Shown: piece by piece, positions 50,894 through 57,559 of the stretch | How positions within the stretch are numbered: the first letter of the stretch is position 1 | Layout of the letters: each line of letters starts with the position of its first letter | Source of the DNA: Macrostomum lignano | Taxonomy: Eukaryota | Length of the DNA: 64,000 nt | Assembly (NCBI GenBank): GCA_002269645.1 | Contig: NIVC01003487.1 | Span: 31,332-95,331, forward strand | Reading direction: 5' to 3' | The notes under the pieces: generated by a model | What the model saw: the letters and a program-made list of their open reading frames with translations, nothing else | What the model was told of the DNA's origin: nothing | Database searches by the model: none | Translations under genes and position numbers: made by a program

Positions 50894-53800
50894 AATGCCG
50901 CCAAGCACCGCCTGCTGGGCACCGTAGCCAACCAGCCCAGGAGACTCAGCCGGATCAGCGGACCCCGGCAGGACTCAGAGCTGTGCAGCCTGGCCGCAGC
51001 GCACCCGCACCTGTCCTGCGAGTCTCTGGCTCGAGCCTGGTCCGTGCCGGCGTCCAGGCACACCGTCAGGCGGCGGCTCATCTCGGCGGGCTTCCGCAGT
51101 CGGGCGGATCGGTGCAACTCCGCGCCTGCCGGAGGCGCCAAGTTCAGGGCCTGGTGCGCGGCGCGTCTGAAGTGGGCTCGGCTACGGCTGCACTGGGGAC
51201 CGGAGCACTGGGCCAGGTGAGACTCTGAGCTGGTCAGCTCTGATTGCACTGAGCACAGGTGAGACTCTGAGCTGGTCAGCTCTGATTGCACTGAGCACAG
51301 GTGAGACTCTGAGCTGGTCAGCTCTGATTGCACTGAGCACAGGTGAGACTCTAAGCTAGTCAGCTCTGATTGCACTGAGCACAGGTGAGACTCTGAGCTG
51401 GTCAGCTCTGATTGCACTGGGCCAGGTGAGACTCTGAGCTGGTCAGCTCTGATTGCACTGAGCACAGGTGAGACTCTGAGCTGGTCAGCTCTGATTGCAC
51501 TGAGCACAGGTGAGACTCTAAGCTGGTCAGCTCTGATTGCACTGAGCACAGGTGAGACTCTGAGCTGGTCAGCTCTGATTGCACTGGGCCAGGTGAGACT
51601 CTGAGCTGGTCAGCTCTAATTGACATTGCAGAATTCTGTTCACGGACGAGACCTGCTTCAAGCTAACCGACTTTACCTGCCGAGGTCGTCAGTGGCGAAT
51701 GAAAAATCTGAGTAGGAAAAAATCATCGAGAGTGGCGGAAGAGCGCAGGAATCCGGAGGCAGAGGCGTCGGGCCATGGGCAGCCAGGTGAGCAACGCCTC
51801 ACAAGGTAAGCAAAGTGACATTGATGGCTTGTGCGTGCAGTTTAGCCATAGAAATCCGGATACAGCAGCCTAAAAGCTACTGCAAGGGGGCGCCAAAGCT
51901 ACTTTAAGGGGGCGCCAAAGCTACAAGGGGGCGCCAAAGCTGCTGCAATGGGCGCCAAAGCTGCTGCAATGGGCGCCAAAGCTGCTGCAATGGGCGGCAA
52001 TTGGCAAAGCTACTGCAATGGGCGCCAAAGCTACTTCAAGGGGGCGCCGAAGATACTGCAATGGGCGCTAAAGCTACTGCAATGGGCGCCAAAGCTGCTG
52101 CAATGGGTGCCAAAACTACTGCAATGGGCGCCAAAGCTGCTGCAATGGGCGCCAAAGCTACTGCAATGGGCGCCAAAGCTACTTCAAGGGGGCGCCAAAG
52201 CTACTCCAAAGGGGGCGCCAAAGCTACTGCAATGGGCGGCAAAGCTGCTGCAATGGGCGCCAAAGCTGCTGCAAATGGGCGGCAATCGGCAAAGCTACTG
52301 CAATGGGCGCCAAAGCTGCTGCAATGGGCGCCAAAGCTACTGCAATGGGCGCCAAAGCTACTTCAAGGGGGCGCCAAAGCTACTCCAAAGGGGGCGCCAA
52401 AGCAACTGCAATGGGCGCCAAAGCTGCTGCAATGGGCGCCAAAGCTGCTGCAAATGGGCGGCAATCGGCAAACAACAACAACAAAATACGCTGTCATGAT
52501 GGTAAAAGTCTGCGTCACAGGGCGCGCTTCATGGCTTGGGCGCGAACAAAGGCCGCGCCACCGGCAGTGTCCGGGGCGCCGGCGTCAGCCAGCAGACAGT
52601 CGACATAACGCCGAGTTCGCGCTTGACCTCGCCGGTAGGGTGCCTGCAGCGTGAGCAGCAGCACCTCCTGCACCGGCTGTGGGCAGTACGACTCGGCGCG
52701 GATGAGATGGCCTGCGAGCTGGAGTCGCCGACGGCGCAGTAGATCACTTGGACGTGGCAGGCCAGCGCGGCGATAGAGTGCCGCGTTGGTGACTCGCTCG
52801 ACGCCGATGTTGAAGGCGGCGCGCAGCAGACCAGCGTGCGCCGCATCGACTTGCTGTTCGAGTGAGTCCGTCAGCGTCCAGGTCTCGGCGTTGTACAGCA
52901 GGACGGTCTCGATTACCGCCTGGAACAGCGCCGCCCTCTGGCGGTCCGGTAGGGCCTCGGACTGCAGGACTGCCCTCACAGAACGAAAGGCAGCCCAGGC
53001 AAGCCCGCGGCGGCGTCGCAGGTCCTCGCGAGCGTCTGGAACCAGACCGCCGAGGTAGACGAACTGCTGACATCGCGGGAGTTCGGTCGCCTGCCCGTCA
53101 GCGCCTCGGCAAAATATTGCAGCCTCGATGTCGTCCGGCACGCAGAGCACAACGGTCTTCTGCGTGTTGACCACCAGGCCGACACTCGCCGCAACGGCAA
53201 CCAGCCTGTCCAGCTGCCGTTGGGCGCCCTCGACGGTCGAGGACAGCAGGGCGAGGTCGTCGGCGTAGCCAAGCACGCTGAGCCGCTTCTCCGGTTGACG
53301 TCGACCCACGCGTCGCTGCAGCAGAAAACCGTCGTCGTCGGTAGGAAGAGCAGTCCGCAGCACCCAGTCAAGCACCAGGACGAACAGAAACGGCGCCAGC
53401 GTATCTCCCTGAAGCACTCCGGAGGATGTCTCAAAGGAGTCCGATAGGCCGTCCGGTGTTGTCACAGCAGCTGTCGTATCACGGTACATCGCCATGACGG
53501 CGGAGATCAGCTGCTCAGGCACGTTGTACGCGCGGAGCACCATTGGAAGCACGGCTCTGACAACCGAGTCGAATGCCTTCTTGAAATCAATAAAGATTAA
53601 AATCAGTATCGACTGACGAATCCGCGCCTCCTCGATGACTCGGCGAAGAGCCAGGATCTGCGCCACTGTGCCGCGATGGGGCCGGAACCCGTTCTGCTCT
53701 GGGCGCAGGTACGGATCCAGCACGGGCTGCAACCGCGAAAGCAGCATCCGGTTGAACAGCTTCGCTGCACAGGACTGAAGGCAGATGCCTCGATGGTCTT

Positions 53801-56479
53801 CAAGCCTAGTGGTGCCCGGCTTCTTTGGAACAGCGACGATGTGCGCCGTGGTCCATTCGTTGGGCGCCGCCTCACCGAAGAGCACGCGGTTCATCACTCT
53901 GGCGACCTCAGCGGCCACACAGGGGATGCGCAGCGCCTCGATGGGCACCTCGTCCGGACCCAGCGCTTTCCCGCCCGGTGACTGCTGGGCGAGCTTGACA
54001 ACGTCGGCTGCGTTGACTGGGGCTACGCTGAAACTCTCCTCTGCCGGCAGCGGCGTCTCCGGCGGCAGCGTCAGACTGTCTGGCAGCGGGGGTGGCGGCG
54101 CGTTGACGATGGCGGCGAAGAACTCGCGCGTCTTCCGGCGCTCGTCCGGCGTGTCACCAGCCAGGTTCAGCGGATTGCGCCGCTTTCGTCCCGTCAGAGC
54201 GTTGATGGCGGACCAGGCCACGCGCCCTCTGGCATCGGGCCCAGCGGCAGAGACAGCCTGAATGGCGTCATCGACAGCCGCTTGTTGGCGCTGCAGGTAG
54301 ACAGCTGCCAGAGCTGCCTCTGCCTCGCGGGTTGGTCGCCTGCTCAAGCGGAGCTTCTCCAGATCTTCCCTCGCTGCCTGAATCGCGGGTCGTCCTGCCA
54401 GACCGGCTGCCCACGTTGAGCCGGCTGCATCATCGGGACTGCTTGCTCCGCGGCGGTTCTGACTGCAGCGCACACTTCCGCATACTCGGCACTTCCACGC
54501 TTGTCGCCCAGCGCGGTGTTAAAGGCGCTAGCAAAGCGACGCTGCGTATCGGTGGCTCTGAGCGCGCGGTAGTAGCGCCGCGGTGGCCGCTTCGGCGGAC
54601 GGTAGAGCGGATCGCGAAGGTTGAGGTCGCAGATGAGGAGCCGGTGATCGGACCGCAGAGCCAGCGGCGTGATGGTGCGGCAGTTGACGGCGCGACGACG
54701 CTCACGGAAACGCACGAGCACGTGGTCGAGCTGTGCTTGTCTCCGGGTTGCGTTCCTGCCACGCGCGTTCCGCCGCCTCCGCTTGCAGCCCACGAAGGTT
54801 GCGAGACCGCTCAGTGGCTTGCGGAAGCGGGTGTTGGCCGACACCATGTCCTGCCTCTCCAGGAAGTCCTCCAGTGCCTCGGTGTTGTTGTTCCCGCGTG
54901 GCGTCACGAACAGCGACCTCTCGGACCTACGCAGGACTGCGTTCAGGTCTCCGAGGGCGACCGCTGTGTCACGCTGCGCCGTCGCCTCTACCTGCACTGA
55001 GAGCTGCTCGAAAAACTCTTGAGCCTCGTCAGGGCGTGTGGCAGGGGGCGCGTACGCGCAGAACAGGCGAGCATTCCGACCGCGTAGCCGGACGTCGATC
55101 CGAAGCAACCGGGGGACAGGGAGACGCAGCGACAGCTCTGCTGCAGCCTCGGCCCGATCAGCGCTCCAACTCCTCCACGGCCTCGCTGGTCCGCAGAAGT
55201 ATAGTAGAGGGTCCACCCGGCGCCCAAGTCCTCACAATGAAGTCCCGGGTCGGCCTTGATAGACACCTCCTGCAGCGAGATGATGTCGCAGCTCAGGTCG
55301 TACGCCAGCTTCGCCAGCACCCCTCTACGCCAAGCAGCCTTGAGAGTGCGGCAGTTCAGCGTCCCGACCCGAAGCATGCCCTGTGGTACGGCTGGGGCTC
55401 GATGCAGTTGAGCCTCACGGTCCCCGGCGCCACCCGGAGGATCCGAGTGGACCCGCGCGGCAGCTCGACGGGCGGCGCCACGCAGCCGGCCTCGTCGGTT
55501 CCGCTCACGCCGGCGCTCAACACGCCGACGGGCGCTCCGCTGCCCTCGCTTGGTCCTGCCGCATTTGGCCGCCGCAGCAGTTAAGCGCGGCTCTCCGCTC
55601 TGACCACGAGGAGGTAGCGGCATTTATCATGCAATAAATTGAGTCTTCGCAGTAAGAGATGCCCACGCAGTAAGAGATCCCAAGCTACTGCAATGGGCGC
55701 CAAAGCTACTCCAAGGGGGCGCCAAAGCTATTTCTAGGGGGCGCCAAAGCTACTCCAAGGGGGCACCAAAGCTACTTATAGGGGGCGCCAAAGCTACCGC
55801 AAGGGGGTGCATATGTTTTTGCAAAAATGATTAGGGGAGGGGGCCGCGGCCCCCTTGCCCCCCCCCCCCAACCCAACTGCATGCTGACCGAGGGCCGATT
55901 TGCGAGGGCCCAACTTGTATGCTGCCACATTTCAGAAGCAGGTCACGAGCTCCGGGCGTACAGCAAGAGCAGCCGCAGTGGCGCCAGTTCCCCTCGGTGT
56001 GGCTCTGGGCTGGCATCCACTTGACCGGCCAGAGCGAGGCCGTCTTCCCGGACAGCCTGACCGGCCCGGCTTACGCCCGCCTGCTGGAGGCGGTGGTGGC
56101 GCCCTACTGCCAGCGCCACCTGCCTGAGAGCTGCCAGCTCATGGACGACAACGCGCCGCACCATCGGACGGTGCTGGTCACCGAGGCCAAGCGGCGGCTC
56201 GAACTCGCGACCGTCCAAGACTGGCCGGCCCGGTCGCCCGACCTGAACCCGATTGAGAACGCTTGGGCGCTGCTCAAAAGCCGAGTGCGGCAAAGGCGGG
56301 ACGAACTACGGCTGGGGCAGGGCGACCGCCCCGGTGAGGATTCGGCAAGGCTCAAACAAATCATCAAAGAGGAGTGGCGGCGAATGGGTGGGGAAGGCGT
56401 GGCGGCGAGACTGGTGGGGAGCATGCCGAGGCGATGCCAAATGGTTGTGGACAACAACGGAGGTCGAATTAAGTATTGA
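50894..56479 (+). CDS. Intron-containing Tc1/IS630-type transposase-derived gene (DD35E); exons ~50894/50906-51216, 51632-51805, 55936-56479; start unresolved
   Basis: HTH_Tc3-like SRHTVRRRLISAGFRSR...RLKWARLRLHW, then ILFTDETCF (D1), SVWLWAGI, MDDNAPHH (D2), WPARSPDLNPIENAW (E; 35 residues after D2). Both introns are GT-AG, phase 2, and the frame is preserved. Confidence 0.85.
51205..51620. repeat. 42-bp tandem array spanning the exon/intron boundary (about 10 copies of cag|gtgaga)
   Basis: Unit caggtgagactctgagctggtcagctctgattgcactgagca; contains the hairpin gagctg-gt-cagctc. Confidence 0.93.
51880..52468. repeat. 21-bp satellite (gcgccaaagctactgcaatgg), continuing at 55680-55805 on the far side of the LINE
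   Basis: The same unit lies on both sides of the LINE insertion. Confidence 0.93.
52515..55623 (-). pseudogene. RTE EN-RT ORF with two 1-nt frameshifts in C-runs (~55112 and ~54388); likely start MLRVGTLN at 55377
   Basis: Adding one C at each run gives VSLSPRLLRIDV and QDDPAIQAARED, and one open frame of ~1036 codons from 55623. Confidence 0.85.
55557..55622 (-). ncRNA. HDV-like ribozyme core (P2, P3/L3, P1 3' strand, P1.1, P4, J4/2); P1 5' strand absent
   Basis: Minus strand: TGCCGCT-ACC-TCCTCGT-GGT-CAGAGC-GG-AGA-GCCGCG..TGCGGC-GGCCAA-A(T)GCGGCA. Manual fold only. Confidence 0.55.
55628..55659 (-). other. Spliced-leader-like sequence TCTCTTACTGCGAAGACTCAATTTATTGCATG at the LINE 5' end
   Basis: Matches the Macrostomum lignano SL as I recall it (not database-verified); ends in ATG, as flatworm SLs do. 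Confidence 0.75.
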
Positions 56480-56920
56480 CTGGGGATCACCATGGGATCT
56501 GGGATCAGCATGAGATCTGGGATCTGGGATCAGCACGAGATCTGGGATCTGGGATCAGCACGAGAGCTGGGATCTGAGATTTGGCATCAGCATGGGATCT
56601 GGGATCATAATGGGATCTGGGATCAGCATGGGATTTGGGATCTGGGATCAGCATGGGATTTGGGATCAGCTTGGAATCTGGGATCTGTATGGGATGGGAT
56701 CAGCATGAGATCTAGGATCTGGGATCAGCATGGTATATGGGATCAGCATGGGATCCGGGATCTGGGATCAGCATGGGATCCAGGATCTGGGATCAGCATG
56801 GGATCCAGGATCTGGGATCAGCATGAGACCCAGGATCTGGGATCAGCATGGTATATGGGATCAGCATGGGATCCGGGATCTGGGATCAGCATGGGATTTG
56901 GGATCTGGGATCAGCATGAG
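56480..56920. repeat. gatctgggatcagcatgg-type minisatellite starting right after the Tc1-gene stop
   Basis: Direct, with variable unit length. Confidence 0.9.
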
Positions 56921-57064: not shown

Positions 57065-57375
57065 AATTTAACTTTCCGAGATACTTGTTTGTCCAAAGAC
57101 GCAAATTTAACTTTCCGAGATACTTGTTTGTCCAAAGACGCAAATTTAACTTTCCGAGATACTTGTTTGTCCAAAGACGCAAATTTAACTTTCCGAGATA
57201 CTTGTTTGTCCAAAGACGCAAATTTAACTTTCCGAGATACTTGTTTGTCCAAAGACGCAAATTTAACTTTCCGAGATACTTGTTTGTCCAAAGACGCAAA
57301 TTTAACTTTCCGAGATACTTGTTTGTCCAAAGACGCAAATTTAACTTTCCGAGATACTTGTTTGTCCAAAGACGC
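57065..57375. repeat. 39-bp near-perfect tandem repeat, ~8 copies
   Basis: 13-aa periodic translation NLRLWTNKYLGKL. Confidence 0.96.
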
Positions 57376-57559
57376 ACAATTTTTACTTTTTCATATTTTA
57401 TTCATCATAATCCAATTTTAGCATGCTGATGGTACAAAAACGTGTTATAGTATTATTTTTATTGTTAATTTTTTATTTGAAAAAATAAAAACGCGAATCA
57501 CGCTACTGAATTTGTCGAACCAAGTAGTGTGCAATGCGAAATTATTTAATATTAGAATT

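What the first reader, a model, noticed from the sequence alone, without database searches (positions are those of the whole stretch)
55620..55680. RTE-type LINE whose 5' end is a trans-spliced leader
Seen: the full-length LINE begins (minus strand) with TCTCTTACTGCGAAGACTCAATTTATTGCATG, immediately followed by ATAAATGCCG; no SL-RNA intron/Sm portion follows. Knowledge: flatworm SLs end in AUG, and this string matches the M. lignano SL as I recall it. Inference: the LINE RNA was SL trans-spliced before reverse transcription, so the cDNA copied the leader. The element may use host trans-splicing to obtain a capped 5' end rather than relying on an internal promoter. This differs from SLACS/NeSL elements, which insert into SL genes. 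Alternatively, the SL is now a fixed part of the element's 5'UTR.
Basis: partly seen in the sequence, partly recalled or inferred. Interest (0 to 1): 0.9.

Follow-up and report, generated by a model that had tools for sequence, protein, structure and literature searches.

The report
LINE copy tagged with spliced leader
One copy of a flatworm jumping gene (an RTE-like LINE) carries the host's spliced-leader sequence where its normal 5' hairpin should be, most likely because its RNA was trans-spliced before being copied back into DNA; this kind of event has already been noted in other flatworms.

Summary
Window 55628-55659 (-) matches nt 4-35 of the published 35-nt Macrostomum lignano spliced leader (SL) exactly. 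ATAA and the LINE's native start codon follow directly, not the SL-RNA intron.

Empty-site reconstruction defines one 3211-bp insertion (55681-52471, minus strand) in a 21/22-bp satellite. It ends in (GTT)4 and has no target duplication beyond a 0-2-nt T ambiguity.

The four closest relatives with intact 5' ends (65-72% aa identity) carry no SL. They begin with a conserved hairpin that runs into the start codon, and the SL replaces that hairpin here. One relative has AG exactly at the junction.

Best reading (about 0.7): a host-driven LINE transcript was SL trans-spliced and then retrotransposed. The main rival (about 0.2) is an RT template switch onto SL RNA, helped by a UAA microhomology.

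No second copy of the same subfamily with a 5' end could be retrieved, so whether trans-splicing is a habitual strategy remains untested. The copy has two 1-nt frameshifts.

SL-tagged retroelement loci and SL-bearing transposon transcripts are already described in schistosomes, other parasitic flatworms and Hydra. This is a new member of a known kind.

The parts
55682..55807 (-). 5' flank: 21/22-bp satellite (target DNA), ending ...CATTGCAGTAGCTT
   Evidence: TRF. The last 25 nt joined to the first 50 nt of the 3' flank reproduce exactly a 75-mer of the intact array at 52242.
55666..55681 (-). 5' end of the insertion: GGG + ATCTCTTACTGCG (A plus a partial copy of SL nt 4-15)
   Evidence: It forms an 18-nt x2 tandem repeat with the next segment (TRF 55648-55682).
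55660..55665 (-). Spacer TGGGCA, standing where SL nt 1-3 (CGG) would be expected
   Evidence: compared with the SL and the SL RNA gene L007.
55628..55659 (-). Spliced leader, nt 4-35, exact
55624..55627 (-). ATAA: remnant of the LINE's native 5' hairpin 3' arm (the 4-nt 5'UTR after the SL)
   Evidence: Homology to L008 and L010 starts at the first nt after the SL (0/2000 and 1/2000 shuffles).
55111..55623 (-). ORF segment 1: native ATG (55623), basic N-terminal region and first half of the AP-endonuclease domain, up to frameshift 1 in the C5 run at 55111-55115
   Evidence: The same C5 frameshift is present in L001.
54380..55110 (-). ORF segment 2: rest of the endonuclease and linker, up to frameshift 2 within GACCCGCGATTC (54391-54380)
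   Evidence: Pfam Exo_endo_phos, weak; tblastn against P0008.
52515..54389 (-). ORF segment 3: reverse transcriptase (RVT_1 about 53049-53828) and C-terminal region; stop TGA at 52515-52517
   Evidence: Pfam RVT_1 3e-28; 65% identity to P0008 over 614 aa.
52471..52514 (-). 3'UTR (32 nt) and (GTT)4 tail, the 3' end of the insertion
   Evidence: The same (GTT)n tail ends relatives L008 and L003.
51873..52470 (-). 3' flank: the same 21-bp satellite (179-bp higher-order period), starting TGCCGATTGCCGCCC
   Evidence: TRF; empty-site reconstruction.

Best explanation
This is a single retrotransposition product of an RTE-like LINE (one ORF of about 1036 aa with AP-endonuclease plus RT, 3.2 kb, (GTT)n tail) that landed in a 21-bp satellite of the Macrostomum lignano genome.

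The RNA that was reverse-transcribed was not the native element RNA. Native RNAs of this group begin with an 11-15-bp hairpin that runs into the start codon. Here, a transcript, probably started at a host promoter upstream of a source copy (inferred), had received the 35-nt host spliced leader by trans-splicing. The acceptor lay inside the 3' arm of that hairpin, 4 nt before the ATG (inferred).

The SL-capped mRNA was translated, and its own RT copied it back into DNA by target-primed reverse transcription. The copying ran to within 3 nt of the SL's capped 5' end. There a few extra nucleotides and a second 13-nt piece of the SL were added before joining to the target (inferred).

The new copy has lost the outron, the acceptor and the native hairpin. 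It carries an out-of-frame SL AUG that opens a 37-codon uORF, and two frameshifts. It is therefore a dead, SL-tagged retrocopy rather than a new master element.
For: - The SL identity is exact over 32 nt.
- The junction falls exactly at the SL exon's 3' end. LINE homology to L008 and L010 begins at the very next nucleotide.
- There is no SL intron or Sm region.
- The ATG at 55623 is the native start.
- The insertion boundaries are proved by an exact 75-nt empty-site match within the satellite. The SL is therefore part of the inserted cDNA, not of the target.
- Relatives L003, L008, L010 and L011 have a 5' hairpin (z -3.6 to -5.0) that is absent here.
- L008 has AG immediately before ATAA.
- About 30% of M. 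lignano genes are SL trans-spliced, and an unpaired acceptor near the 5' end is sufficient for it (PMC8629364).
- The donor GGUAAGA of SL RNA is base-paired in the predicted fold. That disfavours annealing of a cDNA end there.
- Precedents exist: SL exons fused to TEs in S. mansoni (PMC5832876), 597 LTR/LINE-associated partial-SL loci in parasitic flatworms (PMC12582326), and about 30% of Hydra TE Iso-Seq reads carrying an SL (PMC12220107).
- Other copies of the family exist in M. lignano gene models at 89-100% identity.
Against: - Only one SL-bearing copy was seen. No progenitor with an outron and no SL-LINE transcript could be examined.
- The AG is seen only in L008 (71% aa identity). L010, L011 and L003 lack it, so its presence in the true progenitor is an inference.
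- TATAG fits the M. lignano trans-acceptor motif [T/C]TNCAG only loosely, and it lies inside a stable stem.
- Three of the 4 nt after the SL match the SL intron start GTAA. That offers a microhomology for the template-switch rival.
- The first 3 SL nt are replaced by GGGCA, and an 18-nt duplication sits at the 5' end. Template jumping or slippage therefore did occur somewhere in this event.
Confidence: 0.7

Rival explanations
1. RT template switch (a chimeric retrocopy of the U6/L1 type). While copying a native LINE RNA, the RT stalled inside the 5' hairpin after copying ...ATAAATG. The cDNA 3' end (...TTAT) annealed to UAA of the GUAA at the SL-RNA exon/intron boundary, or the RT jumped to the 3' end of a free SL exon. 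Synthesis then continued to the SL's 5' end. No trans-splicing of LINE RNA is needed.
For: - The junction lies inside the 3' arm of a strong hairpin in relatives, which is a plausible RT stall site.
- The alignment to the SL RNA gene extends 4 nt past the exon, with 35 of 36 matches (GTAA versus ATAA).
- The 18-nt duplication plus extra nucleotides at the 5' end show irregular template use in this same event.
- SL RNA is an abundant small nuclear RNA.
Against: - The switch point would have to coincide with the exon end, one of about 109 positions in SL RNA. snRNA-LINE chimeras normally contain the small RNA up to its own 3' end, and here about 70 nt of SL RNA are missing.
- GUAA is base-paired in the predicted SL RNA fold.
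- ATAA is identical to the LINE sequence of L008, so the TAA match needs no special explanation (about 5% by chance).
- The complete ORF is retained.
Confidence: 0.2
2. Habitual strategy. The subfamily regularly matures its mRNA by SL trans-splicing of host read-through transcripts, or the SL has become a fixed part of its 5'UTR. Full-length copies would then generally start with the SL at this junction.
For: - The element group has essentially no 5'UTR beyond a hairpin, so dependence on host transcription plus 5' processing is plausible.
- The flatworm RTE Perere-3 is reported to use host promoters plus a 5' ribozyme (PMC8501958).
- The junction sits 4 nt before the ATG and preserves the whole ORF.
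- TE transcripts commonly carry an SL in Hydra.
Against: - All four closest relatives with 5' ends have the hairpin and no SL.
- An SL-bearing copy has lost the acceptor and cannot repeat the process at the same site.
- The SL AUG is out of frame and creates an overlapping uORF.
- The junction 24-mer has no hit in JGI metagenome contigs, although that collection holds little Macrostomum DNA.
- Only one copy was observed.
Confidence: 0.15
3. The LINE is an SL-gene-specific element (SLACS/CZAR/NeSL-like) sitting in an SL RNA gene, or the juxtaposition is an assembly chimera.
For: SL sequence abuts the LINE. The assembly shows 1-nt indels in the ORF.
Against: - Both flanks are one continuous satellite with an exact 75-nt empty site.
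- There is no SL promoter, intron or Sm sequence on either side.
- The endonuclease is AP-type, not REL-type.
- A mis-join falling exactly at the SL exon end and 4 nt before the ATG is very unlikely.
Confidence: 0.03

Closest known systems
SL-exon sequences fused to transposable elements in flatworm genomes (S. mansoni, PMC5832876; 597 LTR/LINE-associated partial-SL loci in 24 parasitic flatworms, PMC12582326)
   Same: A genome-encoded SL exon without the rest of the SL RNA sits at the 5' side of a retroelement. The authors propose the same origin: integration of retroelement transcripts that had been trans-spliced.
   Different: Those reports are genome-wide tallies without junction anatomy, and one flags possible assembly chimeras. 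Here the insertion boundaries, the exact exon-end junction, the replaced native 5' hairpin and a candidate acceptor AG are resolved. The host is a free-living macrostomid.
Dinoflagellate retrogenes with SL relics (PMC5585692, PMC12014239; Slamovits and Keeling 2008, from my own knowledge)
   Same: Reverse transcription of SL trans-spliced mRNAs leaves a DNA-encoded SL at the 5' end of the retrocopy.
   Different: Those are host genes copied in trans. They often carry stacked, 5'-truncated relics because the dinoflagellate SL contains a reusable AG. Here the RNA is the LINE's own mRNA, and the extra piece is a 5' partial duplicate, not a re-spliced relic.
SL-bearing TE transcripts in Hydra (PMC12220107) and SL1 trans-spliced Cer1 mRNA in C. 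elegans (PMC3315495)
   Same: Transposon transcripts are substrates of the host SL trans-splicing machinery.
   Different: That evidence is at the RNA level. For Cer1, the trans-spliced RNA is a subgenomic spliced mRNA, not the full-length RNA that would serve as the genome. Here the evidence is a DNA copy made from such an RNA.
SLACS / CZAR / CRE (trypanosomatids) and NeSL-1 (C. elegans)
   Same: These are non-LTR retrotransposons physically associated with SL sequence.
   Different: Those elements insert site-specifically into SL RNA genes using a REL-type endonuclease, and they are flanked by SL gene halves (from my own knowledge). This element has an AP-type endonuclease, lies in a satellite, and carries the SL as part of its cDNA.
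U6/L1 and other snRNA-LINE chimeric retrocopies formed by RT template switching (from my own knowledge)
   Same: A small nuclear RNA sequence is fused to the 5' side of a LINE in one insertion event. This is the model for the main rival explanation.
   Different: Those chimeras contain the small RNA up to its own 3' end and usually a 5'-truncated LINE. Here only the SL exon is present, ending exactly at the splice donor, and the LINE ORF is complete.
Ribozyme-processed 5' ends of co-transcribed LINEs (R2 and L1Tc HDV-like ribozymes, PMC3774820 and PMC3185411; twister-variant at Perere-3, an RTE of S. mansoni, PMC8501958)
   Same: These are promoter-less or promoter-poor LINEs transcribed from host promoters that need a 5' end-forming step. 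Trans-splicing would play the same role and would also add a cap.
   Different: No Rfam ribozyme was found at the 5' ends of the relatives. The native 5' element here is a simple hairpin of unknown function.

Membership tests
SL-tagged retrocopy (retroposed trans-spliced RNA) | DNA-encoded sequence identical to the species' SL exon | tested here: met
   32 of 32 nt identical to SL nt 4-35 and to the SL RNA gene in L007.
SL-tagged retrocopy (retroposed trans-spliced RNA) | The SL ends exactly at the exon's 3' end, with no SL-RNA intron or Sm part; the downstream sequence is the acceptor RNA | tested here: met
   GCATG|ATAAATGCCG versus the gene's GCATG|GTAAGACACCG. LINE homology starts at the first nt after the SL. 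Caveat: TAA is shared with the intron.
SL-tagged retrocopy (retroposed trans-spliced RNA) | The SL lies inside a discrete retroposed unit (defined ends, 3' tail) | tested here: met
   Exact 75-nt empty site. The (GTT)4 tail is shared with relatives.
SL-tagged retrocopy (retroposed trans-spliced RNA) | A progenitor locus with a 3' splice acceptor (AG) at the junction | tested here: inconclusive
   AG is present in relative L008 (TATAG|ATAAAAG) but not in L010, L011 or L003. The true progenitor was not available.
SL-tagged retrocopy (retroposed trans-spliced RNA) | SL-LINE junction present in RNA | not testable with these tools
   No M. lignano RNA-seq or genome was reachable. Exact look-up of the window's 211-aa and 652-aa ORFs found no encoding contig on record.
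RTE-clade non-LTR retrotransposon | Single long ORF with N-terminal AP endonuclease and RT, and no separate gag-like ORF1 | tested here: met
   Exo_endo_phos plus RVT_1. The window copy matches the 1042-aa single ORF of P0008 over residues 12-1031, in three frame segments, so two frameshifts break it here.
RTE-clade non-LTR retrotransposon | Very short element (about 3.2 kb) with minimal UTRs and a simple-repeat 3' end rather than poly(A) | tested here: met
   3211 bp, a 32-nt 3'UTR and (GTT)4. Relatives have a hairpin-only 5'UTR of about 35 nt.
RTE-clade non-LTR retrotransposon | RT groups phylogenetically with RTE-1/BovB/SR2/Perere-3 | not tested
   No named RTE reference sequences were available. 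Database hits are unnamed.
SLACS/CZAR/NeSL SL-gene-specific LINEs | Inserted within an SL RNA gene, with SL gene sequence on both sides | tested here: not met
   Satellite DNA lies on both sides. No SL intron follows the 3' end.
SLACS/CZAR/NeSL SL-gene-specific LINEs | Restriction-enzyme-like endonuclease C-terminal to the RT | tested here: not met
   The endonuclease is N-terminal and AP-type. No other domain was found C-terminal to the RT.
snRNA-LINE template-switch chimera (U6/L1 type) | The small-RNA part extends to that RNA's own 3' end or includes non-exon parts | tested here: not met
   Only the SL exon (nt 4-35) is present. The roughly 74-nt intron part of the 109-nt SL RNA is absent.
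Ribozyme-processed LINE 5' end (HDV-like, twister) | A recognisable self-cleaving ribozyme at the element's 5' end | tested here: not met
   No Rfam hit at E<=1 in the L003, L008, L010 or L011 5' regions, and none in the window at gathering scores. Variant ribozymes outside Rfam are not excluded.

The most novel reading that the evidence does not exclude
SL trans-splicing is a regular maturation route for this RTE-like subfamily in M. lignano. Source copies embedded in host transcription units would be trans-spliced at an AG inside their 5' hairpin. This would release a TMG-capped, translatable LINE mRNA and so do the job that ribozymes do for R2 or Perere-3. SL-tagged full-length copies with the identical junction would then recur in the genome.
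Probability: 0.15. Interest if true: 0.65.

Novelty: new member of a known kind. Interest (0 to 1): 0.35.

Why it matters
This is a clean, base-resolved case of a LINE's own mRNA passing through the host's SL trans-splicing pathway and still completing retrotransposition. The insertion limits are exact and the junction is at the exact exon end. The native 5' hairpin is replaced, and there is a candidate acceptor site.

It supports the passing suggestions made for schistosomes and other parasitic flatworms, and it extends them to a free-living model flatworm with transgenesis. In that animal the question of how promoter-poor RTE elements obtain a capped 5' end could be tested directly.

There is also a practical point. 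[quoted passage not shown]

Tried and rejected
**Searches for other copies of the same subfamily with 5' ends (all failed or were uninformative)**
- A protein search with the N-terminal ORF gave 2 hits. One is a 5'-truncated copy, L001; the other is a UniRef model with no DNA.
- Exact look-ups of the window's own ORFs found nothing.
- The SL-LINE junction 24-mer has 0 hits in JGI metagenome contigs.
- The search for related loci with an N-terminal alignment gave 2 distant loci without an SL.
- The SL 21-mer has 0 hits in IMG/VR.

**Relatives examined**
- L002, L004 and L012 (52-67% aa identity) belong to a different subgroup, with TGACGTCA-containing 5'UTRs and, in L012, a (TAA)n tail. They are not informative for the junction.
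- L009 is 5'-truncated.

**Ideas rejected**
- The 21-bp array is not the LINE's own 3' tail, nor a head-to-tail LINE tandem. The two flanks join into an exact intact satellite unit, and relatives end at (GTT)n.
- The element is not inserted in an SL gene.
- No ribozyme at the 5' end was detected by Rfam.
- This is not a dinoflagellate-style re-spliced SL relic. The extra piece is the SL's 5' part, not its part downstream of the internal AG.
- Pfam gave no clade-specific domain to confirm RTE membership.
Full report
**1. Observation**

On the minus strand the window reads ...CATTGCAGTAGCTT GGG ATCTCTTACTGCG TGGGCA TCTCTTACTGCGAAGACTCAATTTATTGCATG ATAA ATGCCGCTACC.... It is unique in the window and is never reached in shuffles. 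The 3' 18-mer is also unique, even with 3 mismatches allowed.

The published M. lignano SL is the 35-mer CGGTCTCTTACTGCGAAGACTCAATTTATTGCATG (PMC8629364). The window therefore holds SL nt 4-35 exactly.

An independent check came from a scan of prokaryotic genome contigs for the SL 21-mer. It hit one contig that had been mis-binned into a Flavobacteriaceae MAG (L007). That contig carries a U1 snRNA gene (Rfam, 151.7 bits). About 320 bp downstream of it is a canonical SL RNA gene: the SL, then GTAAGAC, two further hairpins and an AUAUUUUUAG Sm-like site.

In the window the SL is followed by ATAAATGCCG, not by that intron. The species assignment is supported by UniRef M. lignano gene models that contain fragments of the same LINE family at 89-100% identity.

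**2. What the element is**

The minus-strand ORF runs from the ATG at 55623 to the TGA at 52515-52517. It encodes an AP-type endonuclease and a reverse transcriptase (Pfam). It aligns to residues 12-1031 of the 1042-aa single ORF of relative P0008/L003, and the N-termini align from the Met in a separate alignment.

The frame is broken twice by 1-nt losses. One is in a C5 run at 55111-55115; the other is within 54380-54391. The first frameshift is shared with L001, an Illumina metagenome contig 84-87% identical in nucleotides. The more distant relatives are intact at that site.

After the stop come 32 nt of 3'UTR and (GTT)4. Relatives L008 and L003 end in the same (GTT)n. This architecture is that of an RTE-type LINE: about 3.2 kb, one ORF, a simple-repeat tail and almost no UTRs. 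I did not test phylogenetic placement.

**3. Insertion boundaries**

The same 21/22-bp satellite lies upstream of the SL (55682-55807) and downstream of the (GTT)4 tail (51873-52470). Joining the last 25 nt of the upstream flank to the first 50 nt of the downstream flank gives a 75-mer. That 75-mer occurs exactly, once, in the uninterrupted part of the array.

The insertion is therefore 55681-52471 (3211 bp), with no target duplication or deletion beyond a 0-2-nt T ambiguity. Three things follow:
- The satellite is target DNA, not the LINE's tail.
- The element is not in an SL gene.
- The GGG, the partial SL copy, the TGGGCA spacer and the SL all arrived with the cDNA.

**4. The native 5' end of the family**

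No second copy of the same subfamily with a 5' end could be retrieved. The closest relatives with 5' ends come from metagenome and Logan contigs (L008, L010, L011, L003; 65-72% aa identity). All of them start with an 11-15-bp A/U-rich hairpin whose 3' arm runs into the start codon. Their folding energies are -12 to -17.6 kcal/mol, with z-scores of -3.6 to -5.0. The stems differ in sequence between relatives, so the pairing is kept by compensatory changes.

None of these relatives carries an SL. The window's copy lacks the hairpin (z -1.0). Its sequence becomes homologous to L008 and L010 at the first nucleotide after the SL (ATAAATGCCGCTACCTCCT versus ATAAAAGCCGC-ACCTCCT; 0/2000 and 1/2000 shuffles). 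The SL has therefore replaced the 5' arm, the loop and most of the 3' arm.

In L008 the two bases before ATAA are AG (GGCGTATAG|ATAAAAG). L010, L011 and L003 have no AG there.

**5. Mechanism**

The junction coincides exactly with the SL exon's 3' end, and it lies 4 nt upstream of the native ATG. A relative has an AG at that point. In M. lignano, 30% of genes are trans-spliced, and an unpaired acceptor near the 5' end is sufficient.

I conclude, with confidence about 0.7, that the template for this insertion was an SL trans-spliced LINE mRNA. It most likely arose from a source copy transcribed from an upstream host promoter. That last step is an inference. It rests on the absence of any 5'UTR beyond the hairpin, and on what is reported for the flatworm RTE Perere-3 (PMC8501958).

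Reverse transcription ran to SL nt 4. In place of nt 1-3 the copy has GGGCA, preceded by a second copy of SL nt 4-15 with its own leading A and GGG. Together these form an 18-nt x2 repeat. This could reflect cap-proximal non-templated addition and a template jump during TPRT, or a later slippage duplication. I cannot tell which.

The SL's AUG is out of frame with the ORF and opens a 37-codon overlapping uORF. The copy also has no acceptor left. Together with the frameshifts, this makes it a dead-on-arrival product.

**6. Rivals**

The serious rival (about 0.2) is a template switch. In this scenario the RT stalls in the hairpin after copying ...ATAAATG. The cDNA end pairs with UAA of the GUAA at the SL RNA donor site, and copying continues to the SL's 5' end. 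This would explain why alignment to the SL RNA gene extends 4 nt past the exon, with 35 of 36 matches.

Several points count against it:
- ATAA is exactly what L008 has at that place.
- The donor region is base-paired in the SL RNA fold.
- snRNA-LINE chimeras normally keep the small RNA's 3' end.
- The switch would have to fall on one particular position out of about 109.

The stronger claim, that trans-splicing is the family's habitual way of making mRNA or that the SL is fixed in its 5'UTR, gets about 0.15. The relatives' hairpin-type 5' ends argue against fixation, and recurrence could not be tested. SL-gene targeting and assembly artefact are contradicted by the flanks.

**7. Comparison with what is known**

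- Boroni et al. found SL exons merged to transposable elements in S. mansoni. They suggested these were trans-spliced elements that had been reverse-transcribed (PMC5832876).
- A 2025 survey discarded 597 SL-like loci associated with LTR and LINE elements in parasitic flatworms, with the same interpretation (PMC12582326).
- About 30% of Hydra TE Iso-Seq reads carry an SL (PMC12220107).
- A subgenomic Cer1 mRNA is SL1 trans-spliced in C. elegans (PMC3315495).
- Dinoflagellate retrogenes carry SL relics (listing).

The kind of event is therefore known. What is new here is the host and the resolved anatomy. I rate it a new member of a known kind, with interest 0.35.

Noticed in passing
L003:21-46, L008:46-79, L010:2-37, L011:177-203: A conserved 5'-terminal hairpin (11-15 bp, A/U-rich, stems differing between relatives) runs into or immediately abuts the start codon, which is mutated in L003 and L008, in the four closest relatives of this LINE. 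Its function is unknown (5' processing, translation control or RT binding?). No Rfam ribozyme match was found.
   Followed up: partly
window 55648-55682; L003:1-34: Both the window's copy (ATCTCTTACTGCG x2, 18-nt spacing) and relative L003 (CATGATATTTTCA x2, 17-nt spacing) have a 13-nt exact duplicate at the extreme 5' end, separated by a short G-rich spacer (TGGGC / GTGC). This may be a signature of how this RT finishes or jumps at RNA 5' ends. It rests on only two cases, and L003 is a de Bruijn contig.
   Followed up: no
window 55111-55115; L001:~505-509: The same 1-nt frameshift (C5 where relatives have one more base) occurs in the endonuclease of both the window's copy and L001 (84-87% nt identity, Illumina assembly). 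Either a frameshifted lineage kept propagating (mobilised in trans, or recoded), or the run is a deletion hotspot.
   Followed up: partly
L007 (JAGQZA010000190.1, 'Flavobacteriaceae bacterium' MAG), 1121-1283 and 1599-1707: A contig in a bacterial MAG is eukaryotic. It carries a U1 snRNA gene (Rfam, 151.7 bits) and a Macrostomum-type SL RNA gene, so flatworm DNA was mis-binned into the MAG. It also shows the sequence CCGTAAAGA directly upstream of the 35-nt SL.
   Followed up: partly
window 55919-56479 (+): ORF with a DDE_3 (Tc1/mariner-type transposase) domain, E 7.5e-12, next to the satellite. A G12 run lies at about 55861-55873.
   Followed up: no
window 51205-51622; 56483-56920; 57065-57382: Further tandem arrays flank the locus: a 42-bp unit x10 (96% matches), an 18/25-bp degenerate array, and a 39-bp unit x8 (99% matches). 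The LINE sits in a repeat-dense region. The insertion has 65% GC, against 49% for the whole window.
   Followed up: no
L002:~700-720, L004:~185-200, L012:~355-395: A more distant subgroup of the same LINE superfamily has TGACGTCA (CRE-like palindrome) motifs around the start codon instead of the hairpin. At least L012 has a (TAA)n tail instead of (GTT)n.
   Followed up: no
P0025, P0053, P0056, P0060 (UniRef M. lignano gene models): Published M. lignano gene models are chimeras of host exons (Band 7, PCI domain and others) with fragments of this LINE's RT at 89-100% identity. LINE fragments contaminate the protein annotation.
   Followed up: no
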